Assembly (NCBI RefSeq): GCF_006345805.1
Contig: NC_043002.1
Coordinates: 18,476,001 to 18,540,000 of the forward strand
Source: Octopus sinensis
Lineage: Eukaryota
DNA: 64,000 nt
Reading direction: 5' to 3'
The stretch's first letter is position 1, and every line of letters starts with the position of its first letter. Below are positions 42,617-64,000 of the stretch, in pieces. The notes beneath the pieces were generated by a model. It made no database searches. It was not told the DNA's origin and saw only the letters and a list, made by a program, of their open reading frames with translations. The position numbers and the translations under genes were made by a program.

Positions 42617-42681
<65 letters not shown>

Positions 42682-43360: not shown

Positions 43361-43411
<51 letters not shown>

Positions 43412-43545: not shown

Positions 43546-44057
43546 TCCATGTCCTTCTTCTTCCTTTATATGAATATAAGCTACCTATTATTTTAAGGAA
43601 ATCATTTCCCCCAAAAATATTAGGTATTGAACCTATGTTTCTCTGGATGCCACCATCCCTTCAGACAGCCGACAACTGTTGAAAGGACATTCTTTATGTT
43701 TTCCATTTGTTTCTCTCGCTGTTTACGTATTAAACTCATTCGTTTTCGTACTTCATGTTGTTTACTGTTGGTGACGTCATGTACCCATACATGCATACGT
43801 ATATATATACACACATACAAACAAACATATATATACATATATATTATATAAATATTTTACATATTATATATATACATACATACACACATATACATATATG
43901 TATACACACACAAGTATATATTCTTCGTTGAATGAGAAGCACCTGAACGTCTTCTTGCATTCTTCCCCATCAGTTGGTATTCTGGCGTTAATGATGATTC
44001 GCTGAAATACTTGGGTACTTCCCCACCATTCTATCACCGTTTCTGTTGGTCACAGGA

Positions 44058-45850
44058 GATAGAACTTCAAGTCAAATTAGATGCCACTAGATACTCTTTC
44101 AACCAAGCGCCTAGGTGTAATACTTTATCTATATTCCCAAAGCAGTAAACGGATAAATTTGGACAGGTGTTGTGTTTCTTTTTGGAATAGGTGCTGTGTG
44201 TTTCTTTTTTACACCAGTGTATATGTTTCTTTTTGGAATAATAACCCTCCTGAGATAGAACCATATATCTTTCAGATCATTCAGTTTGTATTGCTTTCAT
44301 ATGCGTGTAGTTATGATACAGTAACCACATACTGTTGACAATCATCACCATAGCTTTTTCAGTTGAATTTGCGTGGTATTTGATACATCAGTATGACAGT
44401 AAATATCAAACTACTTCATCTTGCTGATATTTGAACAGTTTACCATCATAAGAACGCTCCAACGTCTGATATTGTAATTTTGTTATAAAGCCATTCTCGA
44501 CGTGAAGGCGAAAATTGTCTTTACAAGAGGCACTTGTAAACATGATGTTGAGATTTGTTTAAAGCTGAGATATGTTTGACAGATAATTCTGTCATTTAAA
44601 CTGGAACCAAACTAGCAAGAAGAAATTTACAAATATGCCTACTGCTTTCTTTTTCTGAACATATGGAAACAGTCGCTATTTAACGAAGCCTATCTTTTCT
44701 AATAAAAACAATGGTCTAATAAACGCACTCTGATTGCTATTAAAATGCAGCATTCATGGGCCCGAGAACAGGGGTGCAAGTGGTGCAAGTGCACCCCCTA
44801 GAACTTTTGCAGAGTGCAGAACCAAAATTTGCAGCCCTATTTATTTTCCTCGGGTTTAGAAAACGGTAAATAAAAAGTGATGTGTAAAAAGTAGCTTGAA
44901 GTTGGGTTCCTTCTCAAAGAGCAAAACACAAAAATAACAAAAAAAAATAGACCTTTTTTGTAAATATTTTTGGACCTGGGTTTGCAACCCCTAAGCAAAT
45001 TTCATTCCCGAGCCAGTGGCAGCATTAAAATTAACTTTTACTTTGTAACTCAAATGCAAGCTTGAAGATAGAACTTCAAGTCAGAATACGTACAACCCAG
45101 ATAGACGCTAATAATAAGCATTACTTTCGATACTCTTTCAACCAACCATCTAGGAGTAATACTTTATCTATCTCCCCAAAACAGTAATACCTTGCGGATA
45201 AATTTGGACAGGTGCTGATGCTGTGTGTGATATCTTAACCATTGGATATGCAATCTATACTTTCTATCACGTCGTGTACGTTTAGGAACAGCCTTAACTC
45301 TAATCTTTTAATACGTATTTCATGTTTTTGCACTGAAAAGACGTAGCCTTCTAGATGAGATGAGATGTTGGTATCACAACTCCCCGTGAAGCTATAAATC
45401 ATGCCAATGATTAATTGTCAATGTTGGTATTCTCCAGCGATGCGTAACTTTCTGCTGGAATGAGTATTTTCTTCACCACGTTTATGTTAAGTAAGTTAAA
45501 CCAGCTATCCGTGCTTCACATGGAACAGCTGTACATTCGGATTACCTGCTGAGTAGTTCTTCATTTAATTCAACTGCGTTATTCATTTCTCTCTTTTCTG
45601 TTATCTAAGTGATATTATGTGACACTCAAAGGCCGTCTGGATTGGCCTTATGCTTCTGTAGCCATCCCTCCGTTTAACATAGATCCTGCAAGCGTCACTA
45701 GTGATGTGGAAGTTACTAGGTTGTATCCTTCTAGATTCGATGTTTAATTTAAAGATCTCTTCAAATGTCCATTCTAGTATCCGAAATGTTAGTACACTGG
45801 TCCTACCAAAAGCATTCTGAGTGACGGTCACATTGATTTCAGACAGCACT
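44058..45850 (-). mobile_element. Decayed RLE LINE (R4-like) pieces, partly duplicated, interrupted by a MITE
   Basis: ORF 45601..45849 reads LEWTFEEI...FHITSD..RIYVKR...FECHIISLR; STCPNLSARYY-type segment at ~45067-45212, duplicated at ~44058-44170. Confidence 0.6.
44755..45018. mobile_element. hAT-like MITE with 8-bp TSD
   Basis: CA...TG termini, imperfect 14-bp TIR (10/14); GCAGCATT at 44747-44754 and 45019-45026. Confidence 0.8.
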
Positions 45851-45946
45851 GATGTCTATATATATATATGTGTGTGTGTATACATGTGTGTGTGTGTCTG
45901 TGTGTGTGTGTCTGTGAGTGTGTCTGTGTCTGTGTGTCTGTGTGTA

Positions 45947-45984
<38 letters not shown>

Positions 45985-47680
45985 TGTACGCGCGTGCGTG
46001 TACAGTAGAAGCCCTTATTAAGACGACTTTGAAATAGAGTCTCTTTAGTTTGCAGTAATCAGCTGATAACTTAGGTATATGTTAGAAGTGTCCGTGGGTA
46101 GACATATGTGTACTTCCCCCCATTTAACTTACACTAGATCCATTATTTTAGGTCATCCATAAAAGGATATTGTGAAGTTAATTTCTATATATACGACAAT
46201 TATGTCTCAAATTAAATGCTTGTTTTATCTAATCTTGCGCTCAGGCTGCTTTCTTTTAGTGACACATATTCGTTGATTCTCGACATCTGGTGTTCAAGTT
46301 GTGAATTTTTTGCACCTGACTGTTTTCACAATCGTTTCTAGTTGACGATGTCAGTAATAAAGCATTTAATAATGGACAAGTTTTAAAATCATTCCACGAC
46401 TCTGTAAATCAGATCATCTCCTCCAATAGATTTCTCACTCTGCCGAAGTCATAACATTGAGAAATGATTTGATAAAATCTTGTTCGACAATGGATGACAT
46501 TTGCTTCCCAAGTGCCTTTATTCTTGATTATTTTATTGCAAAATAGACATTGTTCCTAAAATAAAGTGTAAGCAACAGAAGCAGCATTGAATTGAAATAA
46601 CCATCTGTAAGCTGTACTTACCGTAAATACACCATTGCAAGACTTGATGCTATAGTTTGCAAAATGTCTGCGAGAAAACTTCTTCACAGATATATCTTGT
46701 TAAAAACACAATATATTTTGGAGTAAGACGAGTATCGTCCTAGCAGCGACTCTCATGAACATCAAACATGTTTTTCCCTTCTTGGGCCTAGTCAGTGACA
46801 AATACCCGATTGACTCGTTCCTAGACGGAATATGTCACATCCGTCATATAGCGATCATCGAATAGCACATTCACAAACATTGCGCACAGCTTGCCGAGCG
46901 TAAATAAACTCAGTGTACGCAATTGAAACAGCATTAAATTATAAATGCCATCTGTGTATCATATTCAGCAAATACACACCATTGACAGGGATGACAAGCT
47001 CCAAGAAAGGCGAAACGCGTCTGACGTTCTCATGATTCACTGCTGTGGCGATGTTTGTCTCTTTCCGATACATATTGTGTTGAATTTTTGTTTGTGAATT
47101 ATAATGTTGCTGTACTATCAATAAAGAGATGACTTTCGGTTTCAAATCTAGTGAATTGTAAGACAGCATTTTTTGGTGAGGACAGGAAACTGTGATGCCG
47201 AGCACTTAGTGAAAACACTTTTCTACTGGAGAAAGCAGATTGTCTTTAGCCGAGATCAGAATTTCTGATATTCTTACAATCACAGAATAAGCATTTCTAA
47301 ATAACATGCATTGCACAAAATGAAATACACATTTTTATGCGTACAAAAATATGGAGTCGTAGAGTAAATTATTTTTCACTGTGGGGCTCAAAGTCTATAA
47401 AGCTATAAATGTTAGTATGTAGAATATTAGATGATAAAGAGTTCCCTGGATGGAAAAAAAGTAGCACGTTGACCACAGGACCCAAACCTACTTTTTTGTA
47501 AGAATGACAGACACGCCAACCATTACACCAAAGCAACGCTTCAAATTTTTTCATCCAATTTAGAAGTTTTGTTCTTATCGGGGCGGATTTTTTCTCATTG
47601 GCAAGATGTTTACATGGTAAGAATTCAGAAAATGAAAGAGATATGAAGTAAATTGATTTTTGACAGTGAAACTGTAAGTA

Positions 47681-47760
47681 CAGTAGAACTTCGTTTTACG
47701 AATGCCTCTCATCACGAACAAATCGGTTTACGAACAAGTTTTCTGACATAAAATTGTTAG
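47681..47760 (+). mobile_element. Single pogo/Tigger-like transposon end
   Basis: TA|CAGTAGAACTTCGTTTTACGAA...; partner end not found. Confidence 0.4.
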
Positions 47761-48553
47761 TCGATGGTTGTTTCGAATTGTATTTTGTCAATTGTGGAAA
47801 TGGAAGTTGTACGGAACCCATGTCTGACAAGTATAGAAGTCTTCAAACATTGTAGCAGGGAAGACGTATCGAACACTACTAGGTGTCGCCTCTTGAAGCA
47901 GGTAGCCAGGAATTTGTAGGCCCCTTGTTTTCCTTTTTAATAGTCCTCAATGCTACAATGGCCTCGATCCTTTTTGAGACATGAACGTTAGGAAATTAAG
48001 AAAGGAAATTGGTTTACAAATTATTCAGAGACATTTCAAAAGAAAATTGAAGCTACATGCATATAAGACACAAATAGAATAAATATATTATAAAGACCAG
48101 AGAGTCAAGTTAGTACAAGTGTGTTTTAATGATCCACTTATCAATAACTTGTTCATCTTTTGCCTCACCGATTTTCCGACTCATCACCTCATCGCTCATC
48201 TGCGCATGTCCAGTAAAAAGTTGCTTCTACCTCAATTAATTTTGTTCATTAAAGCTTTCTTGAAGCTGGTGGCCATCTTCACCGATATTACTACGCTGTA
48301 CATGTAAATAAAAGAAAAATACATTTGGAGAGAGTCAACTGAATGATAAAATAGTTTGAGCAATTGAAGTAATACGTGGGTCTGGGACTTTGTGTGTATG
48401 TGAGTGAATGCTTGTATTTGAGAAGGTATACGTAATTAAAAATTTGAGTGAACTGTATGTAACAACTGGGATTGTTTCTTGTCGTAGAAATAGTGTAGTC
48501 ATTGAGGATTTTACCCAATTTTAATAATAATAATAATAACAATAATAATAATA

Positions 48554-48618
<65 letters not shown>

Positions 48619-48619
<1 letters not shown>

Positions 48620-49078
48620 TTGTCTTGGTATAAAAGATAGGCTACAGCAAATATTCTGCTCAATACCACAGATTTGATTGTCAGTTGTTTGACCTTAACC
48701 AGTTGAGTATGTCCCTTAGTGGCTGACGATATGTGCATCTCTGATCATGAGCAGAAGTAGTGGAGGAGAATCATAGCCATGTGTTGAAAGGAATTCTTGG
48801 AGGTTTGGATAATTCACCTTGGAAACATGGGTGGTTCGTCCAACATCCTTAAACAATCCTTATTCAGGGACTTTTTGAGCGGGAAGAAAATTCTAACTGG
48901 GCCCCACCTGCAAGGTCATGTGCTGTTTATCTTGATATGAGATCACCATGTCGCGCACATATGGTTGTGATGCATGTGCCTGGTGTACCCTTTTCAGACG
49001 GGTAGTCATGATGGGTATACTGGGCTTGGTATATTTTACCCCAGTATCACTTTGATGGCATGCACTACTCTCTCACTC
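48619..49078. mobile_element. Interspersed repeat family F, longest copy, in an (AAT)/(ATT) tract
   Basis: Reverse complement of 23887..24334 with an extra internal segment. Confidence 0.85.
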
Positions 49079-49162
49079 AATAATGATAATAATAATAATA
49101 ACTGTAAACCACAGCAAAATTCATAGAAAGAAAAAAAGAAAAATTCAACGATGTGACCATCA

Positions 49163-49215
<53 letters not shown>

Positions 49216-49267
49216 AGTATGTGTGTGTATCATTTTTCTATCAGTAATAAAAAATAAAACAAGGTGA

Positions 49268-49756
<489 letters not shown>

Positions 49757-49789
49757 TAACAATAACAAATAGTAAAAAAAATGAAAATA

Positions 49790-52700
49790 ATAAAATCAGT
49801 GATGATAATAATAATTATGAAAGGAAGCGGTTGGAATCTCCCCATGTCCTGATTGATGATATATCTAGTAATGGTGTCACGATAAAAACACTGGTAATTG
49901 CGCAACCTAATAATCGCTACCTCATACGAATGACAATGAAAAAACAAAATATTGTGAATAGCGGTGGTAATGAAACTAAAGCCCTTGATGGTGACAGGGT
50001 TGCGCCCAGCAGGCTCAGAGATACTGGTCTGACTCCAGCCTGTCGTTATTCAGCAAGGGACCAGCACACACGGCGTAGATGGGACAAACAAGTCAATGCT
50101 GTGGTTATGGAGTGTTACGACCTGAGCAACCCTGTAGACGAAAATGGTGTTCTTATTAGGGGATACCGACAACGTATTATGGAGAGAGAGTGAGGATTGT
50201 TTCAACTCACGGAATAAAGATTATGTGATCAAACTAGAGCAATAAGAAAAAAAACGTTGGCTCACAGAAGTAGAGCTCGAGGCTATCAAAAGACGGGTAT
50301 TGGATAACAGCAACAGTAAGAACGATAAAAATAAAGTTCTTATTGATAAAATTAATCTCATGGCAGAAAACAGAGGTGAGATCTCTAATAAACCACAAGA
50401 AACAGTGATAGCTTGTCAATGAGAGACAAATAGATGGTCTGGAAGAAGACAATGAAACTAATGGTGATATGACAGATGGGCAAAAGACAATCTACGACAG
50501 AATAAAGGCAAGGCTACAGGAGAACGATAGCGACATTATTTGCAACCTTAAAAAGGTTGATGGGTGGAAATTGAACCAAGAAACGAACAAATGTGAATGA
50601 AATACATCAGAACAAAAACCATCACAGAAACAAATAATTTGATCAAGGTAAGTATTGTTATAGCAGAAAATATGGGTGTTGATGTCATATAAAAAAGAAA
50701 AGATCCATAGTGGAAAAGAAAAATACAGGCGGGGTTAGACATGTTCTCGAAAAACATTTCTGTGTTAGACCGAAAAGATAAGGGCGGGGCTTAAAAGCAA
50801 ATAAAAATACAGAGCACTGAACAGGAAATATGATATTGAAGGTAAGGGCCTGAAAGTGGTAATGGAGAAACTGAAACAGCGCATCGCTGCAAAGAAAGCA
50901 AAAATAGTAAAATACAACCAAAGAAGGAAGGGATACAAGCAGAATAGGTTATTCAGAGAAGATCAGAAGGGATTTTACAAAGAAGTAAATGGAGTGTGTA
51001 CAGATGAAAAGTTGATACCAGATAGCATTGAAAACCAAAAGTTTTGGAGTGACATCTGGAGCAAAGACAAGGAACACAATAAGGATGCTGAATGGTTGCA
51101 AGAACTGAAATAAACAGTAGTCTGTCCAAAACAGGCAGAACTACTCATTTCAGTTTGGGAAGTAAAGGAAATCAGCAACAAAATGGGAAACTGGAAGGCC
51201 CCAGGACCAGACGGAGTTCAAGGTTACTGGATAAAAAGATTTGGTGAATGCCATGCATGAATAGCTGCACAACTCAACATCCTGTTAAATACCGACCAAG
51301 TAACACCAGAGTGGTCGACAATGGGTTGGTGCTATGCCTGAAAAACTTCGAAAAAGGCAATACGGTAGACAATTACAGGCCGATATCCTGCTTGCCACTT
51401 GTGTAGAAATTATTGACTAAAATAGTCGCAGTTAATATACGAAAAAATGGAGTCCTGCCACATGAGCAGAAGGGTTGCAAACGTAAGAGCAGAGATACCA
51501 AGGATCAACTCCTGATAGACAAAACTGTACTCAGAGACTGCAAGAGGAGGAAAACTAACTTAGTTATGTCATAGATCGATTATTGTAAGGTGTACGATAT
51601 GATCCCACATTCTTGAATTATGGAATGTATGAACCTATTTGGTATTGCATCAAATGTTGAGCGATTGCTTGGAAAAAGTATGGTGAAGTGGAGGACGGAC
51701 CTGACAGCATACGGAAGAAGTTTAGGGAAATAGAAATCAGGAGAGGCATCTTCTAAGGAGACTGCCTGTCCTCACTGATCTTTGTACTGTGCTTGATACC
51801 ACTAACAGTGATTCTGAGGAGAGCAAAGGCTGGGTGTGTATCAAAGAAACGCCAACATAAAGTCAACCATTTATTACTTATGGAAAACTTCAAACTTTAT
51901 AGTAAAGATGAATCTCAAGTCAGTTCCCTCGTTGATACGGTGCATACTTGCAGTACTGATATCAGAATTGAGTTCAAACTAAAAAAGTGTGATGTGTTAG
52001 TCTTGAAGAAAGGCAAATATCAAATGTATGGACGGGTCAGCGATACCGTTGGGGGAGGTTATGAAACAAATAGAAGAGGTGGGCTATAAGTACTTGGGGA
52101 TATTTGAAATTGATAAATTGATGGAGAAAAAAATGACAAAAATATTTAAGGTGGAGTACTTGGGCAGACTGAGACGGATCCTTAATTTGAAATTAAACGG
52201 ACGGAATAAGATTGAAGCGATCAACACCTGGGCGGTTTTACTCCTTAGATATAGAGCAGGGGTGATCGCATGAACAGTAGACGAACTAAACAGCTTAGAC
52301 AGAAAGACAAGGAAGTCGCTAACTAGATATAGGATATTCAATCCAAAAAGTGACTCAGACAGACTGTATGTAGAAAGAAAGAGAGGAGGAAGGGGACTGT
52401 TTGGATGCGAACACAGCATTAGAGCAAATTAAAACAACATAACGTGGTATGTAACAAATGTCTCAGAACTGCTATTATTGGAAGTAAGAAGGTCAGGCTT
52501 GTGCAGGATGGAAGATTGCAAAAATAAAGCACTGTGCAAGCACTTGAGAATGAATCAAACTGAAAATAGGCGGATAAAGAAAAGAATGCATGGACAACTT
52601 CACAGGGATGTTGAAGATAAAACAGACACAGAAAAAAGATGGCTATGGATGAGTAAAAGTAATTTAAAAATGGAAACGGAATCTCTAACCTGTGCTGCCT

Positions 52701-52930
52701 AAGAGCAAGCGTTAAGAACCAATTACATCAAATACAGAATAGAGAACACATCAAATAAGTGCAGAATTTGTAGACAAAATGGGGAAACAGTCTGGCATAT
52801 TACCAGCCAATGTACGCCACTAGCCCAGAAAGAATATAAGCGATGTCATAATATAACAAGGATTGTCCATTGGACACTTTGCAACAAGTATGGACTTGAC
52901 AGAGCAAAAAAGTGGTATGAAAGGCATGAA
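49790..52930 (+). mobile_element. Near full-length decayed R4/Dong-like RLE LINE
   Basis: N-terminal RRRWDKQVNAVVMECY, RT motifs ([43 protein letters not shown]), CCHC finger KCRIC..ETVWHI..C; many stops and frameshifts. Confidence 0.92.
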
Positions 52931-52949
52931 AGGAAAAAATGTACGGCCA

Positions 52950-53690
52950 GTTTGCAAGAGATGAGAACGCCAAGACAGATACAGGTGGCTATCAATGAGG
53001 AGGAGTGACCTGAAGATAGAGACAGATACATTCAGCCCAGGAACAAGCGTTGATAACCAATTATATGAAGCGCAGATTTGACAACACTACCGATAGCGAC
53101 AAATGCAGAATGTGAGGTAAGAGGGGTGAAAGAGTATGGCACATCGTTAGCGAATGCCCGAATACAAACGACACCATGACAATGTGGTAAGAATGATCCA
53201 TTGCGAGTTCTGTGGAAATCACGGCCTACAAAGAACAAAGACGTGGTATGAAAAAAACCACACAAGGAGTCACCGAAAATCAGAACTGCAAAATCCTGTG
53301 GGATGTAATGATCCAGTACGATCACCTGACCAGACATAGAAAACAGGACATTGTTGTGGTGAATAAAAAAGAAAGAACATGTATGATTATCGACATAACA
53401 TGTCCCGGTGACAAAAGGATTAATATGAAAATCGAAGAAAAAAATAAACAACTACGACGATTTAAAGTGAGAAATACGAAGGTTGTGCTCAATGAAGAGA
53501 GTAGACGTGATACCAATAGTAATTGGTATACGGGGACGTATCAGCATTCAGCTACCAACATGGTGAAAAGGATTGCTTAGAACTGCAAGAATTCATCGCA
53601 GGGTTCTTGAAGCATGACCAGTAAACAAGTGTCACCTTAGTCTGCTGGCTGTGGACAGCTAATACTTCCCATCATACCCAGCAAAATGAG
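52950..53690 (+). mobile_element. Second R4/Dong-like 3' fragment (CCHC plus RLE plus 3' UTR) abutting the first
   Basis: Repeats the EQAL-TNY/CCHC region with a different sequence, then ILWDVMIQYDH..RKQDIVVV..IDITCPGD. Confidence 0.85.
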
Positions 53691-53717
53691 CTGTGAGTTT
53701 TCATATACTAATAATTA

Positions 53718-53922
53718 TAACAATTCTCTCTACTATAGATACAAGGCCTGAAATTTTGGGAGAGGGGACTAGTCGGTTACATCCACCCCAGTGTTTCACT
53801 GGTACTTAATCTACCGACCCCGAAAGGATGAAAATCAAAGTCAGCCTCAATCAGAACTTAGCGACGGGCTAAATACCGCTAAACATTTCGTCTAGCGTGC
53901 AAACGATTCTGCCAGCTCGCCT
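53718..53922 (-). mobile_element. SINE family A, diverged
   Basis: Family-A core and head on the minus strand. Confidence 0.8.
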
Positions 53923-53954
53923 CCTTTATAATAATAATAATATTAATAATAATG

Positions 53955-54036
<82 letters not shown>

Positions 54037-54174
54037 GTCTTTTTTATTCTTACTAAAAGGCTTCAGATCATAAAAAATATATTAAAAAAAATAAATAGAT
54101 TATTTAATACAAACGGTAAGACTCTTTAGTAAAGATATAGACATGGAATTTGGTATAGATAAGTGTGAAATATT

Positions 54175-54402
54175 TATTTCTTTATTACCCTCAAGGGAGC
54201 TAAACATAGAGGGGACAAACAAGGGGATCAAGTCGATTACATCGACCCCAGTGCGCAACTGGTACTTGTTTAATCGACCCCGAAAGGATGAAAGGCAAAG
54301 TCGACCTCGGTGGAATTTGAACTCACAACATAACGACAGACGAAGTACCGCTAAGCATTTTCGCCCGGCGTGCTAACGTTTCTGCCAGCTCACCCCCGCC
54401 TA
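54175..54402 (-). mobile_element. SINE family A nested in the LINE, 16-bp TSD
   Basis: ATAAGTGTGAAATATT at 54159-54174 and 54403-54418. Confidence 0.92.
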
Positions 54403-54996
54403 ATAAGTGTGAAATATTAGTCATGAAAAAGGGTCGGGTAGTCAACAGTGAAGGCGTCCAATTACCAGATGGCCAGACATTAAAATCATTAAAAGGAGAG
54501 AGTTGTAAGTATCTAGGAGTATTAGATATCTAACAGAGCACTAACTATAGAAAGGAAAACGAAAACTGAGAAGGAGTACATCAGAAGGGTGAGAAAGCTA
54601 ATGAAGTCAAAGCTAAATGGTCCGAATTTGTAGATTGGACAAAATCTGAATGAGCAAGTCTACACAGAAGTAAGAAGAAATTCAGTACAAATAGAGGACC
54701 TCTCTCAAGAACAGGAGTAGTAAGATTATACTTACCTGGAAAGGTAAGATAGAATAGGGTTAATATCAGTGTAAGACTGTGTGGTGTTAGCTAGAGTAGA
54801 TGTAGGTAATAGTGAAAGAAATTTAAGAGCTGCTAGAGTCACAAGACATAAGGAAACCAAAAAGCCAAATGAAATTAAAACCCAAGAAAGGAAGAAGGAT
54901 ATCAGACTGGCAAGAGAAGACTTAACATGGTAGATTCCCAAAGATAATTGCAGCAAATAGTAGCAGAGAGATATGATTATGCTTGCAGAAATACTG

Positions 54997-55080
54997 TTTA
55001 CATTATTTACATTCGATGGATATTTGTCCTCATCTTGTTTGTTGTTAACACAACGCGTCGGCTAATATACGCTCCAGTCA
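54997..55080 (-). mobile_element. Family D tail fragment
   Basis: TTACATTATTTACATTCGATGGATATTTGTCCTCATCTTGTTTG..., cut inside hammerhead stem II. Confidence 0.8.
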
Positions 55081-56013
55081 GCTAGAGTAGATATAGACTC
55101 CTATGTAGGTAATAGTGAAGAAAGCTTAAGAGCTGCTAGTGTCACAAGATATAAGGAAACCAAAAAGCCAAATAAAGTTAAAACCCAGAAGAAACATTAT
55201 CTGTCAGGCAAGAGAAGACTTTTCGTGGTAGATTCCCAAAGATAATTACAGCAAATAGTAGTAGTGAGACATGATTATGTTTGCAGAAAGAGAAGCAGAA
55301 AAGGGAGGCAGAAAGTTTGTTAGTAGCTGCACAAGATCAAGCATTAAGGACTAATTGGATAAAAGCCTAAATAAACAAAAACCAGGTAGATTCCTAATGT
55401 CGGTTATGTAAATCAAAAAAAGATAGTGCTACTCATATAGTAAGTGAATATAGCATGGTGGTACAGAAAGAATACAAGAATAGTCATGACAACCTAGAGA
55501 GCATAATCCACTGGGAATTATGTAGGAATCTAGGATTTTACGATAATGATAGATGGTATGAACATGAACCTAGTAAATTAGTAAAAAGTAAGAAAGATGT
55601 TGTGGGACTTTAACATTGAGATGGACAGAGTAATAGAAACTAGAAGTCTTGATTTAGTAGACAAAAAGAATAAAAAGTACCATATAACTTTACAGTTCCA
55701 AATGATGAGAAAGTCAATATGAGAGGTATAGAAAAAATAGCAAAGTACTACGATCTAGCCATTTAATTACAGAGACTATGGGAACTATTAGTAACTATCA
55801 CTAAGTATTTGAACAGATGGACATGGAAAATAGGCATAAAACATAGTCTTGTGCAACTCCAGAAAAAAGTGTTATTAGGGACAGTTAGAATACTTCGGAG
55901 AGTTCTTGGCATCTAAGATTACTTGTTGTAACCCGATGTTAGGAATTTTTCCAACAGTCTAATCTGTTGTGCGTATATAAAATAATAATAGTAATAATAA
56001 TTTATATACTTAC

Positions 56014-56762
56014 CTTGATATCTCCGCCTGACAGGAACACTTCAGCCACCAATAAAGATCCAGCTATAATCATTCCAATGAGCAATATTATCAAAGGGCC
56101 AGCAAATAAAGTGATGTTAAGACCGCTGAAGATGTTGTCATGTATTGAAGTGATTTTATCAAAGTATGCTTGACTGTCCATGAAGACTTCCCAAAAGATA
56201 GTCGTGTGACATTCACCCAGCATCCATTTCTTATGTATTTGTTCAATAATATCCATTTCTTTTAGGCTAATAATAGCATGATTTACCTCATTACTCAGTA
56301 AAGAATTCTTCTGCGTGACAAAGGAATAAGAGTGATCTCCTATGTCTCCGACTACCATAAGGTCACAGGGTTTTTGACTAACTAAAAATTCAGCCAGATC
56401 GCCTTCCATAATATAGGCATACATGCCATTTGATTCTCGCACCCTTTGCAAACCTTCCTCTGTTGACGATGTCAAAACACTTTGATCCTTCATGATGTTT
56501 TCATAAATATGTCTTTCCATAGCAACTGATGACCTTTTAAAATAACGGAGAGTTGAACCTGATTTTAAGGCCCCATAACGGACTTCACTTTGTTTGGCCA
56601 TTTCATAAAAAGTTGTGAATGGTAGAAAAGCATTCTTTGGTCTGTTTGCCAGTAAGTGCGCTGCCATGGAACCGATGTAAAGAACCAGTGTTACCAAGAC
56701 GAATATCCACCAAAACACGCTGAGTGTTCTTCCAGAATAAGACCGAGGCGCAATACGATATC
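56014..56762 (-). CDS. iGluR-like exon: M3, S2, M4
   Basis: Acceptor ATTTTTAG, donor AAG|GTAAGT; encodes [19 protein letters not shown]... Confidence 0.93.
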
Positions 56763-58782
56763 CTAAAAATATATATATATATAATTATGAATATGAATAT
56801 ATGAGTACCTATGTATGTGTTCGTGATAAATATATGTGTGTGTATGTGTATGTATGCATATATATATATATATAAATTTACATGTGTGTGTGTATTTGGG
56901 TGTCAACCAGAAACGGTCAGAAAGACACGAAACGCCGCACCATTTGACTTTTGTTGGCAAAGTATGAACTTCCGGAGCTGATGTGATGAAAGATTTAAAT
57001 TAATTTAATTTATTTCAATTTATTTTCCCCTTTATTTCAGTATGACTAAATCATCCTTTTAAAACGACTGAAACTGGAAGTTTACTTTCTTTAAAATGTT
57101 ATTAATACATTTTCCAAGATAAAATTTCCAAAGCATTTTCTTTTTTTTCTATTCTTAATGTATTTTTAAATGTGTATGTATATATATGTGTGTGTGTGTG
57201 TGTATGTGTGTGTGTGTGTACTTGTATGCTTGTATGCACATATAAATGTGTGTGTAGGTAAATATGTATGTGTGTATGTATTTATAATCACAAATCAGGC
57301 TGTTATAGGTGGTAAGAATTCATTTATATGAGATGCTACACATACATATCCATATTACAATATGAAGATAGATCTTTACAGCTGTTTCAAAGATTCAGTG
57401 ACTGGTTGAGGCTATAATGCATATCATGCAAAAAGACGTACATAATGAGGTCATACATATACACAGCAAGTAAACATAATTATTATGAACTGGCATGAAA
57501 CATGATACGTTAATATTTTCAAGCAGGATACTCCGAATATTTTCATCAGAAGGATTAGTGACAAATGCAATAGTAACAGGTCACATTTTTATGATAATAC
57601 ACAGGCATCACTAAACAGAAATTGAAATTATAGGAAATTTCTTAGAACATGAATTTGTAAAAGTAGTTCCAGACGGTAAAGTTTTTAATATTGCTTTCTT
57701 TTAGTACTTTTAGTAATACATACCAAATACCTAGTTGGTAAGCAGCTTTCTCCATTGTAGTATAGATACATAAGTATAGCTAAAAGACTGTATCTAACAT
57801 ACATACATACATACATACATACATACATACATACATACATACATACATACATTCATTCATACATACATACATACAATCATACATAAATGCATACATACAT
57901 ACATACATACATACATACATACAATCATACATAAATGCATACATACATACATACATCATACATACATACATCATACATACATACATACATACATACATAT
58001 ACATACATACATACATACATACAATGTGGCTAGATTACAAGAAAGCCTTTGATTCCGTTCCCCACTCATGGAAGCTAGAAGCTCTTCAACTTCCTAAAGT
58101 TCCAGTGAGAATAGTCAAAGCCATAGCTGACCTGGCTTCATCGTGGACCGCCATCTTGAAATTAAACCTGATATAATGATTTAGGATAGAGGAGAGAAAC
58201 TGTGTTGTGGAAATTAGCTGCCCAACGGATGTAAACGTAAAGCTGAAGATCAGTGAAAAAGAGAACACCTATGCTGAACTATTGAGAAATCTATAGTTAC
58301 TTTATTCAGATTACCAGTTCAGGTTTATACCTGTAATTATTAGGGTACTTGGATATGTAACACACTGACTAAATACCAATCTTCAGAAATGGGAGTTACG
58401 ATTCAAGAAAATTCTTCTTATAAATGTTTTGCTTGTATCAGGTACGTATATATATATAAAGTGAGGGAGGAAGAGGAGGAAAAGCATTTCTCTTAAATGT
58501 GCACTGAAAACATGTATGCGTTCTCGCTGTGCCTTTTTACCAAAGTTTTTCTCATATTTCCATGCAAGTTCCTTTCCATTTTTTCCTTAACAGTTATGTT
58601 CCCAAAGCCACCATTAAAATTTGTAGAGCCTTCATGTTGATGTATGAGATAAAGTGATGTAGGCTTGTGTTGTTGCGTCGAACCTTTGAAAGTCTGATAT
58701 TTTGATAATGCGTATGAGGATTTTACTATAATAATGATAATAATAATAATGATGAAATAATAATAATAATATAATAATAATA

Positions 58783-58828
<46 letters not shown>

Positions 58829-58855
58829 TATGATAATAATGATAATAATGGTAAT

Positions 58856-58936
<81 letters not shown>

Positions 58937-61815
58937 CGATACGAAATTATAGAAAGGACCTCGGTAAAGAAAATACAATTAATTTTATAGACAGTTGTGT
59001 TTTAGATACAGCATGCACAATCTTACACAGTTACAAACATGCGCACATAACTGAGCTTTTAATTTGATAATGGACTTGATAATTAAGACTGGTCTGGACT
59101 GGATTGGTAAAATGCATTTGCATACTTTAAGAATGTGAGTGAACAAATAGTAATAAAAATGAAAGGTAAGTGCCATCATTGTGACACAGCATCACTTACC
59201 TTGCCACATGAATGTACTGAAGGTGAACCAAAAACTATTCATACAATTAAAACTGCTACGTTTTTCCGAATCAACATCCACGTCCGACGTGTTTGTCCAT
59301 TCATACGGACTAATTCGACCGATTATTGCCAGAAAGCTACCGGTCAGTACATAAGCTAATATGATGAAACACCAAACAGGAGTTGTGAATGGTTTTAAAA
59401 TAATGAAAAGTCCACGTGTCACTTGTGTCAGCTTTGGTTTTTTAATAACGATTTTATATCCAGAACTTAGAAATGGAAAAGACATATCCACATGTCTCAA
59501 ACGGTTTGAATCGAGGGTAAGAGGAGCGGCAGCGATATCAGCATGCTGAAAAGGAAATAATTACTTCCTTTAGAATGGAAACTAGACCAAAATCTATTGG
59601 TTTGACTTCAAAGATGATGCTAGAGGTTATTAATTTTAAGAAAATATGAATGAGTACAGTTTCTTGTATTTGAAACCGAAATCGCATTATCAGGGAGCAA
59701 ATAGCACATTATATTTCTTTACTGCCCACAAGGGGCTAAACATAGAGGGAACAAACAAGGACAGACAAAGGGATTAAGTCGATTACATCGACCCCAGTGC
59801 GTAACTGGTACTTTATTTATCGACCCCGAAAGGATGAAAGGCGAAGTCGACCTCGGCGGAATTTGATCTCGGAACGTAACGACAGACAAAATACGGCTAC
59901 GCATTTCGCCCAGCTCGCTGCCTTAAGCAAATAGCACATTACATCGCATCGGGAGTTTTAACATCATTTTTTTGAAATTTTAAATGTAAGTTTTAAATAT
60001 TGACAAACTGGGACCTAATCTTATAATTGCCTGGGTAGGCTAAATATATTCCTTTTCCAATAGCATTAGTAAAGTAAATGAAATAAGATGACTAATTAAT
60101 TTAAACATCGTCTAAAGGATATAAAAATGTTATTTAAAGAAAATATAAATGAAATTTTTTCTTGGGGTTTAAATTTCCATCAACGAGGTACTGCTGAGGG
60201 ACTAAGGAGTTCACTTTGTAACTATGTGTCTTTTGGGGTACGATCACAGCATTTGATACCTTGTGTAAATGTGTCTTACCAATGCCTTGGATCAACCAAA
60301 GTCTTGTACAGAAAATCGACCAGTTCAACTTCACCCACTTCCTTCTGGGAGATTTGAGCGGGGCCTATTGCGTTTCAAGTATTTGATCCTGGTCTCCTTA
60401 ACTTTCGTAATCAAACCTTCTCGAGGTTGCCTAAAAAGGGTCGTGGACGCCGCGCTTCTTTTTTTGCTTACAAATCTATTAAAAATAAGTTTCTATTTGT
60501 TTAATAGAACAAAAGTCTGGAGATGTTTCCAAGAGAATAGGAACATCCATTAATTATTATTACACTATAGTACTGCCCATTATATGACGGGTAACTTTGG
60601 AAGTATATTGATGGTAATGCTGTCTTTACTTCTCAAACAACAAATAAATAAATATTAGATTATTTTCACTTGACACAAGAACAAATTCTACTAAGCATGG
60701 TATAATTTTTATCCTTTAGTCAGGAGAGAAGGCAGTGTCCAAGAACTGCTACCGGATCTCAGATGCAAGTGGATGTGGGGAGGAAGGTGCATTCAAACAG
60801 GAGACCTCTCCCGAATGCTTGTAATATTAAACCGACCAAAGTAGGCTATTACAGGACTTGAATTTTAAGAGCCGGAACAAAAACTGCAAGGCATCCGGTT
60901 CGATAATTTGCAGTTCCACCAATCCACAGACTTACATTCATATCTTTTGAACGACCATGAGAAGCTGACTGAAAAAATTATCCTCGACGGGATTTGAACT
61001 CAGAGTGCAAAAGAGTCAATACAAATACTGCAAAGTATTCTGCCCAACGCTTTAATGACTCTGCCAATTCACTGCTTTATCGTGTCAGACAAACGTCGAT
61101 GAACGTACAAAGCTAAGGTGATGCGCTGCAAGGTACCAGGATTTTCGACTCGAGTCAAATATAGCAAACTGCTGCAAATCGCTGTTAGAATATCCGTACA
61201 GGTGGAGTCTATCCCGGTTAGTTTGTATGGCATCTAGTTGTATAAGTTCTAATTATGAAGTCAGTCTCTGAAGAAAGAAATGTGGATAACTGAGATGGAT
61301 GAAAATGGTTCACCCATTTCATACCATATGTTCTTGAAACGGCCGTAAGAATTTGAACTTTCACTTGATTTACCAATCGATTCCTCTTAAAATCATTGCG
61401 AACCATTCTTTCATCCATTTGGTAATTTAGATTCATGCAATTATGACCTTGCATGGATAATAACTTTCTCATAGATTCCAAACACAGACGTACAAGTTCA
61501 TACTATATCATGAGAGTATAGCTATGTTTTGTATTTCATATCGTATTTACATATTTATATTTACGCGTATTTTTATGAAGTATTCCGATGTCGGGAAATA
61601 TACTGACGAGATGAACTCTGACTCCTGAAATTTATTCTCTTCTCTTTATATTAATATTTATATTTCATGTTCTATTAATTAGGACGCTAATGAGTTGTTC
61701 TGTACAGGGAGATAATTACCTTTCTATCTGATTATATACATTATACATATATATCTATGTATGTATGTATGTATGTATGTATGTATGTATGTATGTATGT
61801 ATGTATGTATGTATG

Positions 61816-61896
<81 letters not shown>

Positions 61897-62163
61897 AAAA
61901 AAATACAAACACAAAAAAAAACAACGCGAGGACGTGGTACATGTAAAGTATTAGCAGATGCTCAAGGAAGGAAAGAAAGGTGGTTTAACGTTTCGAGCAG
62001 ACGCTCTTCTTCAGAAACAGAGGAAAGTCCAATAGAAAAGGAAGACAGAGCCCCAGCCTCCTGACTGACTTTGGAGTACCTAATTCGCGGAATTCTCTCA
62101 ACCATCGGATTACATTACCTTTTTCATTCGGAATACGCCATTTCTGCACGTTGATTGTGAATC

Positions 62164-62200
<37 letters not shown>

Positions 62201-62486
62201 GTTAGAGACATTAGAGACATATGCATCAGAGCGTTATCAATATCTTTTTCAGCGGATAAAGATATATTTTCAAAGTAGTTTCAAGTCGCCTTACCCCTGA
62301 TACAACTTCTCCAATCATTCCGGTCCAGTTTCCATCTTCATCAATATGTCCAAAGCGTCCGTCTTTCACTAAGTTTATGTCAAAGGTCACATTCATTAAT
62401 GGAGCCATCTGAGCTAACATGTCAACTATGTAGCCATGCTGTTCTCTTCCGCTTTCATGCTTTTCTTCCATGTAAAAGGGAGGAAT
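56014..62486 (-). CDS. Divergent ionotropic glutamate receptor / IR-like subunit, 3 exons, partial at both ends (429 codons)
   Basis: Exons 62486-62295, 59545-59200 and 56762-56014 with GT-AG sites and matching phases (0,1). S1 [22 protein letters not shown]...R..VDMSFPF; M1; M2 SFWF; M3; S2 [18 protein letters not shown]...C; M4. Confidence 0.93.
58023..58400 (+). mobile_element. RLE LINE fragment with RT start fused to the endonuclease (large internal deletion)
   Basis: [15 protein letters not shown] joined to KPDIMI...VEISCP.D.NV...EKENTY...IPVII. Confidence 0.75.
58730..58933. repeat. (AAT)n microsatellite
   Basis: Direct reading; similar tracts at ~48520-48618 and ~53930-54035. Confidence 0.95.
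59200..59545 (-). CDS. iGluR-like exon: end of S1, M1, M2
   Basis: Acceptor TTTCCTTTTCAG, donor G|GTAAGT; encodes [25 protein letters not shown]...[13 protein letters not shown]. Confidence 0.93.
59712..59925 (-). mobile_element. SINE family A with 16-bp TSD
   Basis: AGCAAATAGCACATTA at 59696-59711 and 59926-59941. Confidence 0.92.
61983..62018 (-). ncRNA. Intact minimal type I hammerhead motif
   Basis: GTTT-CTGAAGA-A-GAGC GTCT GCTC-GAAA-CG-TT-AAAC; all stems pair; lies within a pLTR-like repeat at ~61915..62075. Confidence 0.8.
62295..62486 (-). CDS. iGluR-like exon: S1 first half
   Basis: Acceptor TGTTTTCTCCAG, donor GGG|GTAAGG; encodes IPPFYM...[18 protein letters not shown]...[23 protein letters not shown]. 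Confidence 0.92.
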
Positions 62487-62759
62487 CTGGAGAAAACAAA
62501 AACAACCCATTAAGCAAGAATATAAAGCTGTCGAGTAAAAAGACACAGAATTATGTAACCGTCACCTAATTTGTCAGTTACATGGGTGATAATGTACAGG
62601 AAGCAGCAGATAGCTTCAGATTTATAGTCTTGGTAAACGTTTCATTAACAAACTCACAGTGTGCATTGATTTAAACCCTATTGGTAACTGAAAAATAAAA
62701 CGATGAAACATTAGCAGCATGAAGGCGCCATTATTACTTAAATTAATAAGCGTCACACT

Positions 62760-63034
62760 CATTTTAGTCATTAGAGTGCGGCCATGCTGGGGCACCGTCT
62801 TGAAGGGTTTTTATTTGAAAGAATAGAACAAGTTTGGTGCTTAATCTATCGGTCTCTTTTTGTCGAGCTCTTAAGTTACGGAAATGTAAAGAAACCACCA
62901 CCAGTTGTTAGCGGTGGAGGAAGACAAACACAAACACAAAGACACATACACACACACAAACACACACACGCATGCCCGCACACATACACACACACACACT
63001 CACCCGCACACATACACACACACACACACACACC

Positions 63035-63091
<57 letters not shown>

Positions 63092-63250
63092 CGGCAGCGG
63101 GCTCTTTTCGGTTTCCGCCTACCAAATCCACTCACAAGTCTTTGATCGGCCTGGGGCTTCAGTTGGCAACAATTGCCCAAGATGGTTCTGGGACAGAACC
63201 CAAAACCATGTAGTTGAGAAGCGAGCTTCTAACCTCAAGGGCATGCCCAA
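62760..63250 (-). mobile_element. SINE family B, diverged, full length
   Basis: Tail near 62770, central (CA)/(TA)n, head near 63240. Confidence 0.8.
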
Positions 63251-64000
63251 ACCCATAAAAGATAATCAACCACGCCGAGACGCGAAAACGCAACCTTCTG
63301 ATTCGAAGTTAAACGCTTTGTGCCGCACACTGCATTAAAGATAATGATTCAAAATTATTTTGAAATTAATTGAAATGTCGCTATTTGGAAATAAAAGTTT
63401 AATTTCAAATTCTGGTATTTATATTAAATCATATTGAATTAGAGATTTAATCAGAGGACAAGCTGTAGATATGAAGTATGGTAACAACCTAGACATGCTT
63501 GTCTTACTAGGTCTCCTCAATATATTTTTTATCAGTATTTATCAGGCCCTTGATAACAGACATAAACATTTTAAATGAAGTATTTTAGTTCACTATCTTA
63601 AGTACGTTAACACCAACACTTAATTTCTCATGCTGAATATGTAAGTTGGTAATTTCCCCTCTCTCACTCTCTCTCTTTGTTAAAATTATAATTGTTTCCG
63701 ATTTAGATACAAGAAATGTTGTTAATGAGTAAAAGTAAATAGCATACAATTTATTACAATGATTCAGACAGATTTTATACTAGGAAGTAATATGAATAAA
63801 GTTAAATACTTTAGTGTAAATAGTACTATAATCTTGCTACTTTATATCATCTTTATTACATGCAGTAATTGAGATGGCTTATATTTGGAAAACCGCTTCT
63901 GTTTCCACGATTTTATAAACCCTTCCCCGCTAAGCCAGATATCAGCACAAAAGCTTCTAATGTGAATGTCAGTTGCTAACAAAGGATTCACACCTCGTTC

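What the first reader, a model, noticed from the sequence alone, without database searches (positions are those of the whole stretch)
56014..59545. iGluR-like subunit with a normal ligand pocket but rewritten gate and filter
Seen: S1 APLTLDSNR (Thr and Arg), S2 GST and YAYIME (Glu) are retained. The M2 tip is FMWQG (TGG codon at 59206-59204) and M3 reads [10 protein letters not shown]. Established: AMPA/kainate receptors have FMQQG/LMQQG (Q/R site), and SYTANLAAF is the most conserved iGluR motif. Inference: glutamate-like binding is possible, but permeation or gating is altered. It may be non-conducting, an obligate heteromer partner, or a chemosensory IR-like subunit.
Basis: partly seen in the sequence, partly recalled or inferred. 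Interest (0 to 1): 0.7.

Follow-up and report, generated by a model that had tools for sequence, protein, structure and literature searches.

The report
Octopus IR-A type variant glutamate receptor
This is an intact octopus gene for a short glutamate-receptor relative that keeps a normal amino-acid binding pocket but has an unusual pore; the whole molluscan "IR-A" family, already catalogued as candidate chemoreceptors, shares this pattern.

Summary
On the minus strand, TGG at 59206-59204 puts Trp at the AMPA Q/R site (FMWQG). M3 reads LYIGSMAAH instead of SYTANLAAF. The glutamate-contacting residues (Thr, Arg, Ser-Thr, Glu) are all present.

The window is Octopus sinensis chromosome CM016864.1. 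The gene is XP_029637908.1 ("glutamate receptor 2-like", 496 aa). Four of its six coding exons lie in the window. The signal peptide runs straight into S1, so there is no amino-terminal domain. A tandem paralogue lies about 35 kb upstream.

The protein belongs to the molluscan IR-A clade of variant ionotropic receptors. It is 31-40% identical to published IR-A sequences and scores about 140 bits higher on an HMM of that family than on AMPA or kainate HMMs.

The "rewritten" pore is a family trait, not a one-off. Among 72 ATD-less relatives, 32 have Trp and 28 Leu at the Q/R site, and 52 keep four or fewer SYTANLAAF residues. Of 94 full-length relatives, 82 keep eight or nine.

The octopod M3 is under strong purifying selection (dN/dS 0.03), so it is neither an error nor decay.

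The likely function is an amino-acid-sensing tuning subunit with non-canonical permeation. This is untested.

The parts
62295..62486 (-). Coding exon 3 of 6 (192 nt). It encodes the first half of S1, IPPFY...GEVVSG, including the aromatic lid residue Phe in DGRFGH (Tyr450 in GluA2).
   Evidence: AG acceptor and GT donor read directly. tblastn with P0001. Identical to XP_029637908.1 residues 49-112.
59200..59545 (-). Coding exon 4 (346 nt, ends in phase 1). It encodes the second half of S1 (APLTLDSNR), pre-M1, M1, the M1-M2 loop and the M2 pore helix up to FMWQ-G.
   Evidence: Splice sites cag|CATGCT and CAAG|gtaagt. tblastn.
59501..59527 (-). S1 ligand-binding motif APLTLDSNR. Pro72, Thr74 and Arg79 correspond to GluA2 Pro478, Thr480 and Arg485.
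59318..59392 (-). M1 transmembrane helix ([25 protein letters not shown]).
   Evidence: AlphaFold2 helix 119-142, pLDDT above 90. Alignment to GluA1.
59204..59206 (-). TGG codon: Trp178 at the Q/R site at the tip of the M2 re-entrant loop.
   Evidence: Sequence read, alignment to GluA1/2, coordinates. Trp occupies this site in 32 of 72 ATD-less relatives.
56014..56762 (-). Coding exon 5 (749 nt). It encodes the rest of the selectivity filter ([11 protein letters not shown]), M3, the M3-S2 linker, S2, the S2-M4 linker and M4, and ends ...GGDIK|gtaagt.
   Evidence: Splice sites. tblastn.
56755..56757 (-). CGT codon: Arg182 at the +4 filter position (Asp590 in GluA2).
   Evidence: This position is acidic in 85 of 94 full-length relatives but in only 11 of 72 ATD-less relatives.
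56656..56682 (-). M3 gate motif LYIGSMAAH in place of SYTANLAAF. Correspondences: Thr617 to Ile, hinge Ala618 to Gly, Ala621 kept. Just downstream, Thr625 becomes Leu and Met629 becomes Pro.
   Evidence: GluA2 gate and hinge residues from PMC9068512. dN/dS 0.03 across this block against O. bimaculoides.
56608..56646 (-). M3-S2 linker [13 protein letters not shown], three residues longer than in GluA1/2. The insertion is shared with IR-A relatives.
56551..56562 (-). S2 motif SGST. Gly248, Ser249 and Thr250 correspond to GluA2 Gly653, Ser654 and Thr655, the contacts for the gamma-carboxylate.
56401..56421 (-). S2 motif YAYIMEG. Glu299 corresponds to GluA2 Glu705, which contacts the alpha-amino group.
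56122..56208 (-). S2-M4 linker insertion ([29 protein letters not shown]), roughly 15 residues longer than in AMPA receptors.
   Evidence: Alignments. Low AlphaFold2 confidence at 367-392.
56035..56109 (-). M4 transmembrane helix.
   Evidence: AlphaFold2 helix 396-430.
48236..48295 (-). Coding exon 6. It encodes the short cytoplasmic tail RSNIGEDGHQLQESFNEQN and the TAA stop. The EDGHQLxxSF motif is conserved in Argonauta and Sepia.
   Evidence: tblastn. Acceptor tgtacag|CGT and stop codon. Sequences.

Best explanation
The window holds exons 3-6 of Octopus sinensis XP_029637908.1, an intact gene that is the downstream member of a tandem pair.

It encodes a 496-aa variant ionotropic glutamate receptor of the molluscan IR-A clade. 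The layout is: signal peptide, S1, M1, M2, M3, S2, M4, short tail, with no amino-terminal domain. These points are shown.

Inferred mechanism:
- The Venus-flytrap domain keeps every residue that holds the alpha-carboxyl, alpha-amino and gamma-carboxyl groups of glutamate. It probably binds L-glutamate or a similar amino acid.
- The subunit probably acts as a ligand-specifying "tuning" subunit of a tetrameric channel. Because it lacks the assembly domain, it probably works with an ATD-bearing co-receptor such as IR25, with its paralogue, or with both.
- The pore is not a decayed AMPA pore but a different, conserved design. It has a Trp at the Q/R site and Arg instead of Asp at +4. The M3 gate has Gly at the hinge and more hydrophobic gate residues (Ile and Leu in place of Thr617 and Thr625).
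- This design predicts no polyamine block, low Ca2+ permeability, and low or altered conductance.

By analogy with gastropod and bivalve IR-A genes, the likely setting is peripheral chemosensation.
For: Identity:
- The 448-aa conceptual product equals residues 49-496 of XP_029637908.1, and the window DNA matches assembly GCA_006345805.1.

No ATD:
- The annotated N-terminus is a signal peptide followed 13 residues later by S1.
- Sepia mRNA contigs carry in-frame stops upstream of the ATG of a 501-aa ORF.

Family placement:
- Pfam finds Lig_chan and Lig_chan-Glu_bd.
- The AlphaFold2 model has pLDDT 81.6, and its best Foldseek hits are AMPA receptor LBD-TMD structures at about 1e-32.
- Bit scores are 483 on the invertebrate ATD-less HMM, built without cephalopods, against 342 (AMPA) and 326 (kainate).
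- Published IR-A sequences fall in the same family; BarIR-A.1 is 100% identical to P0104.
- The window protein is 31-40% identical to IR-A sequences and 23-26% identical to IR-C sequences.

Pocket:
- Thr, Arg, Ser-Thr and Glu are all present.

Pore under selection:
- Against O. bimaculoides copy B, the M3 block shows 9 synonymous and 1 non-synonymous change (dN/dS 0.03). Exons 5 and 6 together give 0.26.
- The two paralogues differ at 50 of 446 residues but at only 2 between M1 and M3.
- Both motifs are identical in Argonauta.

Family-wide pore pattern.

Relatives in sensory tissue:
- Gastropod IR-A genes are enriched in antenna and lip (PMC12837371).
- Bivalve tentacles and Aplysia rhinophore express IR-A genes (PMC11682238).
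- The same paper reports IR25 expression in Sepia suckers and olfactory organs.
Against: - There is no expression or tissue information for the octopus gene. No octopus transcript contig for it was found in the protein collection; only Sepia whole-larva RNA-seq was found.
- No IR-A receptor has been recorded electrophysiologically, as far as the held literature shows.
- The protein fails the original criterion for IRs, which is loss of at least one glutamate-contacting residue.
- My distance tree places the ATD-less group next to the AMPA class with weak support (bootstrap 0.14-0.46). It contained no IR25, delta or NMDA sequences, so the link to the IR clade rests on published trees.
- Four Trp side chains at the filter tip could occlude a homomeric pore.
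- The consequences for permeation are extrapolated from AMPA and kainate receptor work.
Confidence: 0.55

Rival explanations
1. It is a non-conducting binding protein in the manner of vertebrate kainate-binding proteins. It binds glutamate with an intact clamshell but passes no current of its own. It would act as a buffer, a scaffold, a modulator of other iGluRs, or a metabotropic-style signaller.
For: - The architecture is the same: about 50 kDa, no ATD, intact pocket and non-canonical pore.
- Fish and frog "glutamate receptor U1 / probable glutamate receptor" proteins were retrieved as homologues. They have Leu at the Q/R site and a degraded M3, CYFANFYAM.
- A bulky Trp ring plus Arg at +4 could close or repel cations from the filter. 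This is inference.
Against: - M1-M3 is the most constrained part of the protein. That is hard to explain if the pore has no role beyond membrane anchoring.
- Vertebrate KBP-like proteins score best on the kainate HMM (390-417 bits). They do not score better on the IR-A family HMM (371-400 bits), so shared ancestry is not supported.
- The hinge and the two gate alanines are compatible with a gate that can open.
Confidence: 0.2
2. It is an ordinary neuronal glutamate-gated channel subunit, an AMPA-like receptor that merely lost its ATD. It would form homomers or heteromers with canonical octopus GluA subunits at synapses.
For: - The best matches among solved structures are GluA1/GluA2, at about 1e-77 and 33-37% identity.
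- The glutamate pocket is complete.
- The NCBI name is "glutamate receptor 2-like".
- The NJ tree puts the ATD-less group next to the AMPA class.
Against: - Octopus has a separate canonical AMPA-type gene (P0102, 907 aa) with Gln at the Q/R site, Glu at +4 and an exact SYTANLAAF.
- The window protein scores 140 bits lower on the AMPA HMM than on the IR-A family HMM.
- The ATD, which directs AMPA subunit assembly, is absent.
- The LBD evolves quickly for a synaptic receptor: dN/dS 0.26-0.57.
Confidence: 0.15
3. It is an artefact or a decaying duplicate. The odd motifs would reflect assembly errors or relaxed selection on a redundant tandem copy.
For: - It is one of two tandem copies.
- dN/dS between the paralogues is 0.54 overall.
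Against: - The reading frame is open with canonical GT-AG splice sites at every junction in the window.
- The motifs are identical in independent assemblies of four octopod species.
- dN/dS is 0.03 over M3 and 0.26 over exons 5 and 6 against the orthologous O. bimaculoides copy.
Confidence: 0.03

Closest known systems
Molluscan IR-A clade of variant ionotropic receptors. The clade classification is attributed to Andouche et al. 2021, Chem Senses, and is applied in PMC12837371 and PMC11682238.
   Same: - ATD-less proteins of about 450-520 aa.
- Mostly Trp at the Q/R site (xWQG).
- The same three-residue insertion in the M3-S2 linker (PF.TF) and a long S2-M4 linker.
- 31-40% identity, with HMM scores far above those for AMPA or kainate models.
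- The tandem paralogue XP_029637805.1 and the O. bimaculoides model XP_014783750.1 are in the reference list used for that classification.
   Different: - Many gastropod and bivalve members keep a near-canonical M3 (AYTANLTAF, TYVANLTAF). The octopod clade has LYIGSMAAH, with Gly at the hinge.
- The window gene itself (XP_029637908.1) is not in that list.
- No cephalopod member has expression or functional data.
Insect and protostome Ionotropic Receptors in the original sense (Benton 2009; Croset 2010, PMC2924276): tuning IRs working with IR25a or IR8a co-receptors.
   Same: - No ATD, as in tuning IRs.
- An iGluR-derived LBD plus pore.
- Published trees place molluscan IR-A with IR25 in one well-supported clade (PMC11682238).
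- Tandem duplication, with the LBD diverging faster than the pore.
   Different: The defining LBD criterion, loss of one or more glutamate-contacting residues, is not met. Thr, Arg, Ser-Thr and Glu are all retained. Dependence on a co-receptor is unknown.
Vertebrate kainate-binding proteins (chick and frog KBP, goldfish GFKAR, Xenopus "glutamate receptor U1"). Their properties are stated from my own knowledge; the held literature on them is sparse.
   Same: - About 50 kDa with no ATD.
- Intact agonist pocket.
- Non-Gln Q/R site (Leu) and a degraded SYTANLAAF.
   Different: - They score best on the kainate-receptor HMM and not on the IR-A family HMM.
- They lack the M3-S2 insertion.
- They join the invertebrate group only with weak bootstrap support.
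- This is probably an independent loss of the ATD.
AMPA receptors (GluA1-4), the closest solved structures.
   Same: - LBD-TMD fold.
- 33-37% identity.
- All agonist-contacting residues, the S2 disulfide cysteines, and the M1 and M4 sequence patterns.
   Different: - No ATD.
- The filter is Trp-Gln-Gly-Tyr-Arg instead of Gln-Gln-Gly-Cys-Asp.
- The gate is LYIGSMAAH instead of SYTANLAAF.
- Both LBD-TMD linkers are longer.

Membership tests
iGluR superfamily | A bipartite S1/S2 periplasmic-binding-protein-like domain, interrupted by a pore module (M1, re-entrant M2, M3) and followed by M4. | tested here: met
   Pfam: PF10613 at 2.8e-26, PF00060 at 4.2e-27, PF00497 at 1.1e-10. The AlphaFold2 model has the expected helices. 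Foldseek matches GluA LBD-TMD structures at about 1e-32 over about 440 columns.
Molluscan IR-A clade | Sequence membership: closer to named IR-A proteins than to any other class. | tested here: met
   HMM built without cephalopods: 483 bits, against 342 (AMPA) and 326 (kainate). BLASTP to published IR-A sequences gives 31-40% identity, E 1e-59 to 1e-92; to IR-C it gives 23-26%, E 1e-15 to 1e-19. BarIR-A.1 is identical to family member P0104.
Molluscan IR-A clade | No amino-terminal domain, with only a short segment before S1. | tested here: met
   XP_029637908.1 has 48 residues (signal peptide plus 13 aa) before the first in-window exon. The Sepia mRNA contigs have upstream in-frame stops. Exons 1 and 2 lie beyond the window end.
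Molluscan IR-A clade | Expression in chemosensory tissue. | not testable with these tools
   Reported for gastropod IR-A genes (antenna and lip; PMC12837371), bivalve tentacles and Aplysia (PMC11682238). No octopus data were found.
Ionotropic Receptors in the original sense (Benton/Croset) | A divergent LBD lacking one or more residues that contact glutamate. | tested here: not met
   Definition from PMC2924276. Thr74, Arg79, Ser249, Thr250 and Glu299 are all present. One Argonauta paralogue (P0003) does meet the criterion, with SHSAD at these positions.
Ionotropic Receptors in the original sense (Benton/Croset) | Monophyly with IR25a/IR8a and the other IRs. | not tested
   My tree held no IR25, delta or NMDA sequences. 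Published ML trees report a well-supported molluscan IR clade that includes IR-A (PMC11682238). IR-C sequences score slightly better on the IR-A family HMM than on AMPA or kainate HMMs.
Ionotropic Receptors in the original sense (Benton/Croset) | Function requires an ATD-bearing co-receptor (IR25a or IR8a). | not testable with these tools
   Needs co-expression experiments.
AMPA receptors | An ATD, Gln or Arg at the Q/R site with an acidic +4 residue, and a SYTANLAAF gate. | tested here: not met
   No ATD. Trp at the Q/R site and Arg at +4. Three of nine SYTANLAAF residues are retained. The canonical octopus AMPA-type gene P0102 has all three features.
Vertebrate kainate-binding proteins | Common descent with chick, frog and fish KBPs. 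| tested here: inconclusive
   Fish and frog KBP-like proteins score 390-422 bits on the kainate HMM and 371-400 on the IR-A family HMM. NJ joins them to the invertebrate ATD-less group only at bootstrap 0.19-0.41.
Vertebrate kainate-binding proteins | An ATD-less protein of about 50 kDa with an intact agonist pocket and a non-canonical pore. | tested here: met

The most novel reading that the evidence does not exclude
IR-A receptors may be an ancient family, so far seen mainly in lophotrochozoans, of ATD-less receptors that still bind glutamate-like amino acids but use a different pore design. That design has an aromatic Trp ring at the filter tip, frequently a basic +4 residue, and in cephalopods a rebuilt M3 gate with a glycine hinge. 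If so, ligand binding would produce something other than the classical cation current: anion or very low conductance, or conduction-independent signalling. The same logic might then explain the long-unexplained vertebrate kainate-binding proteins, which reached a similar architecture independently.
Probability: 0.2. Interest if true: 0.6.

Novelty: new member of a known kind. Interest (0 to 1): 0.35.

Why it matters
The gene itself is ordinary: an annotated member of a catalogued family. Three points may still be useful.

- **Pore and ATD go together.** Across 166 relatives, loss of the amino-terminal domain goes with loss of the canonical filter and gate motifs, while the agonist pocket is kept about as often as in full-length receptors.
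- **Surveys under-sample this group.**
  - The main metazoan iGluR phylogeny discarded sequences with fewer than four SYTANLAAF residues.
  - An oyster iGluR survey reported only proteins of 794 aa or more.
- **It is a convenient test case.** Octopods carry a gate sequence held constant by selection, and a tandem pair with the same pore but different ligand-binding domains. That makes them convenient for asking by electrophysiology what a Trp-lined iGluR filter does, and whether IR-A receptors are amino-acid chemoreceptors.

Tried and rejected
1. I first treated P0001 as the orthologue in another species and computed dN/dS from it. It proved to be the tandem paralogue in the same genome. I redid the analysis against O. 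bimaculoides.
2. I looked for the first two coding exons at 62.5-64 kb with tblastn and blastn and did not find them. Synteny with the paralogue places them beyond the window end, and the annotated gene starts about 6.6 kb past it.
3. I searched the literature on kainate-binding proteins. The library holds almost nothing, so KBP properties are stated from memory.
4. I considered membership in the vertebrate KBP family and did not adopt it.
5. The NJ tree with 200 bootstraps resolves the cephalopod clade (bootstrap 1.0) but not the deep nodes, at 0.14-0.46. I did not rely on it for class placement and used HMM score contrasts instead.
6. An apparent internal duplication with frameshift in exon 5 of O. 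bimaculoides copy B is a 10-N assembly gap with overlap, not a lesion.
7. Andouche et al. 2021 and the supplements of PMC11682238 are not held. The published clade label for the octopus paralogue could not be read directly.
8. A search for SYTANLAAF together with cephalopod terms found nothing relevant.


Full report
**What is in the sequence**

The feature lies on the minus strand of a eukaryotic, repeat-rich region with about 35% GC. Reading the DNA gives four exons with canonical AG/GT boundaries:
- 62486-62295
- 59545-59200
- 56762-56014
- 48295-48236, ending in TAA

Together they make an uninterrupted 448-codon frame.

- APLTLDSNR at 59527-59501
- FMWQG, with TGG at 59206-59204
- LYIGSMAAH at 56682-56656
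- SGST at 56562-56551
- YAYIMEG at 56421-56401

**Which gene it is**

The 448 residues are identical to residues 49-496 of Octopus sinensis XP_029637908.1, "glutamate receptor 2-like". The window DNA matches assembly GCA_006345805.1, chromosome CM016864.1.

The two missing 5' coding exons lie beyond the window end. They encode a signal peptide and 13 residues. The mature protein therefore starts at S1 and has no amino-terminal domain.

A paralogue, XP_029637805.1, is 89% identical. It sits about 35 kb upstream in the same orientation, and its introns and 3' flank are collinear with the window's.

O. bimaculoides also has two tandem copies. Its annotated model is a chimera of both, because of assembly gaps.

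**Alignment to known receptors**

The best solved relatives are AMPA receptors, at E about 1e-77. That alignment gives these correspondences:

| GluA2 role | GluA2 residue(s) | Window residue(s) |
|---|---|---|
| Q/R site | Gln586 | Trp178 |
| +4 filter site | Asp590 | Arg182 |
| Gate motif | SYTANLAAF | LYIGSMAAH |
| Gate | Thr617 | Ile |
| Gating hinge | Ala618 | Gly |
| Gate | Ala621 | Ala (kept) |
| Gate | Thr625 | Leu |
| Gate | Met629 | Pro |

Gate and hinge assignments are from PMC9068512.

The M3-S2 linker is three residues longer than in AMPA receptors, and the S2-M4 linker is about 15 residues longer.

The agonist contacts are present: Pro478, Thr480, Arg485, Gly653, Ser654, Thr655, Glu705 and Tyr732 in GluA2 numbering. 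So are the S2 disulfide cysteines. Tyr450 is Phe and Glu402 is His.

An AlphaFold2 model (pLDDT 81.6) has the expected M1, pore helix, long M3 and M4. Its best structural matches are GluA LBD-TMD structures.

**The motifs are real and under constraint**

FMWQG and LYIGSMAAH are identical in:
- the paralogue and its O. vulgaris counterpart;
- both O. bimaculoides copies;
- two Argonauta genes.

Sepia esculenta larval RNA-seq contigs encode a 53%-identical orthologue with FMWQG and LYIGCSVAH. Upstream in-frame stops confirm its short N-terminus.

Selection estimates:
- Against O. bimaculoides copy B, exons 5 and 6 give dS 0.145, dN 0.038 and dN/dS 0.26.
- The 48 codons around M3 carry 9 synonymous changes and 1 non-synonymous change, dN/dS 0.03.
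- The two O. sinensis paralogues differ at 50 of 446 positions but at only 2 between M1 and M3.

The pore is therefore the most conserved part of the protein, and the ligand-binding domain the most variable.

**Family placement**

Homologues from two database searches fall into two kinds: proteins of about 450-520 aa with no ATD, and full-length receptors of about 900 aa. Source names show the full-length ones to be AMPA-type and kainate-type.

The window protein scores as follows:
- 483 bits on an HMM of the invertebrate ATD-less proteins, built without cephalopods
- 342 bits on the AMPA HMM
- 326 bits on the kainate HMM

The ATD-less family has a published name. Supplementary sequences labelled IR-A in a gastropod IR survey (PMC12837371) are members of it:
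- BarIR-A.1 is 100% identical to P0104.
- PcaIR-A.3 corresponds to the Pomacea member.
- The window protein is 31-40% identical to IR-A sequences and 23-26% identical to IR-C sequences.

The octopus paralogue and the O. bimaculoides model appear in that paper's reference list.

Published trees place IR-A with IR25 in a well-supported molluscan IR clade. IR-A genes are reported in gastropod antenna and lip, bivalve tentacles and Aplysia rhinophore.

**The pore pattern is a family trait**

Counts from 166 aligned sequences:

| Feature | ATD-less (n = 72) | Full-length (n = 94) |
|---|---|---|
| Q/R site | Trp 32, Leu 28, Gln 5 | Gln 71 |
| Acidic +4 residue | 11 | 85 |
| SYTANLAAF residues kept | 4 or fewer in 52 | 8 or 9 in 82 |
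| Complete Thr/Arg/Ser/Thr/Glu pocket | 38 | 61 |

"Normal pocket, rewritten filter and gate" thus describes ATD-less relatives in general. What is specific to cephalopods is the actual M3 sequence.

Published surveys under-sample this group:
- The main metazoan iGluR phylogeny excluded sequences with fewer than four SYTANLAAF residues (PMC6307864). That filter would remove this clade.
- An oyster iGluR survey reported only proteins of 794-1224 aa.

**Relation to vertebrate kainate-binding proteins**

Fish and frog "glutamate receptor U1 / probable glutamate receptor" proteins share the architecture. However:
- They score best on the kainate HMM.
- They lack the M3-S2 insertion.
- They join the invertebrate group only with weak bootstrap support.

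I read this as convergence, not shared ancestry. The deep tree is not resolved.

**Likely mechanism**

What is shown: the gene is intact, lacks an ATD, belongs to the IR-A family, keeps a complete pocket and has a constrained non-canonical pore.

What is inferred:
- It binds glutamate or a similar amino acid.
- It works as a tuning subunit of a heteromeric channel, possibly with IR25 or its paralogue.
- Permeation differs from AMPA receptors: no polyamine block, low Ca2+ permeability, and low or altered conductance.
- It acts in peripheral chemosensation.

The main alternatives are a non-conducting binding or modulatory protein and an ordinary synaptic subunit. Neither is excluded, because no functional or octopus expression data exist.

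**Verdict**

The gene is a new member of a known, catalogued but functionally uncharacterised family. Interest is moderate to low for the gene itself. It is somewhat higher for the family-wide link between ATD loss and pore remodelling.

Noticed in passing
window 10281-10751 (-) and 14381-15322 (-): These are exons of a second ion-channel gene. One ORF matches Pfam TRP_2 (E 2e-21), and an upstream ORF carries ankyrin repeats. Together they look like the N-terminal part of a TRPC-type channel, downstream of the IR-A gene on the same strand.
   Followed up: partly
L001 (O. sinensis CM016864.1, about 18.58-18.60 Mb) against window 45889-64000: The tandem paralogue is collinear with the window gene through introns and at least 2.4 kb past the stop codon, at 76-95% identity. 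Synonymous divergence between the two O. sinensis copies (0.11) is lower than between either copy and either O. bimaculoides copy (0.145-0.185). That suggests gene conversion or independent duplications.
   Followed up: partly
L009 (O. bimaculoides CM046606.1), copies at 2696-12579 and 35775-51770: The annotated O. bimaculoides proteins XP_052824974.1 and XP_014783750.1 join exon 4 of the upstream copy to exons 5-6 of the downstream copy. The locus contains 14.5 kb of N, including a 10-N gap inside exon 5.
   Followed up: yes
P0003 (Argonauta hians, 496 aa): One Argonauta paralogue keeps the identical FMWQG and LYIGSMAAH pore but has changed four of the five pocket positions (Thr to Ser, Arg to His, the S2 Thr to Ala, Glu to Asp). 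That is the classical IR signature. The other copy and the Octopus genes keep the pocket.
   Followed up: partly
P0006 (Logan RNA-seq contigs, probably a decapodiform cephalopod): A cephalopod paralogue has Arg at the Q/R site (FLRQG), a still more divergent M3 (MYFACMIGE) and an altered pocket. Whether the Arg is genomic or produced by RNA editing is unknown. The octopus TGG codon contains no adenosine, so A-to-I editing cannot recode it.
   Followed up: no
window 48239-48295 (-): The short cytoplasmic tail has its own exon. Its acidic motif EDGHQL(Q/R)(E/D)SF is conserved from Octopus to Argonauta and Sepia. It may be a trafficking or interaction signal.
   Followed up: no
window 56122-56208 (-): The S2-M4 linker carries an aromatic-rich insertion of about 15-25 residues ([15 protein letters not shown]). 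Related sequences occur in other IR-A proteins. AlphaFold2 gives it low confidence and a small hairpin.
   Followed up: no
window 58024-58176 (+), 24872-25429 (-), and many sites such as 59712-59925, 54167-54397 and 3270-3711: The introns and flanks are full of mobile-element remains:
- a weak reverse-transcriptase fragment in intron 4 (RVT_1, E 0.003);
- a retroelement-like ORF at about 25 kb;
- a SINE-like repeat of about 150-230 bp, present in more than 20 copies in the window and also in the paralogue locus.
   Followed up: partly
window 58640-58950 and 56790-57300: Intron 4 holds long simple repeats, (ATT/TAT)n and (CA/TA)n. These create spurious ORFs of poly-Ile and of His/Thr/Tyr-rich repeats.
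   Followed up: no
P0094 (Lineus longissimus, 989 aa): A nemertean protein matches the query in two separate stretches and is twice the usual length. It may be two IR-A units fused in one gene model.
   Followed up: no
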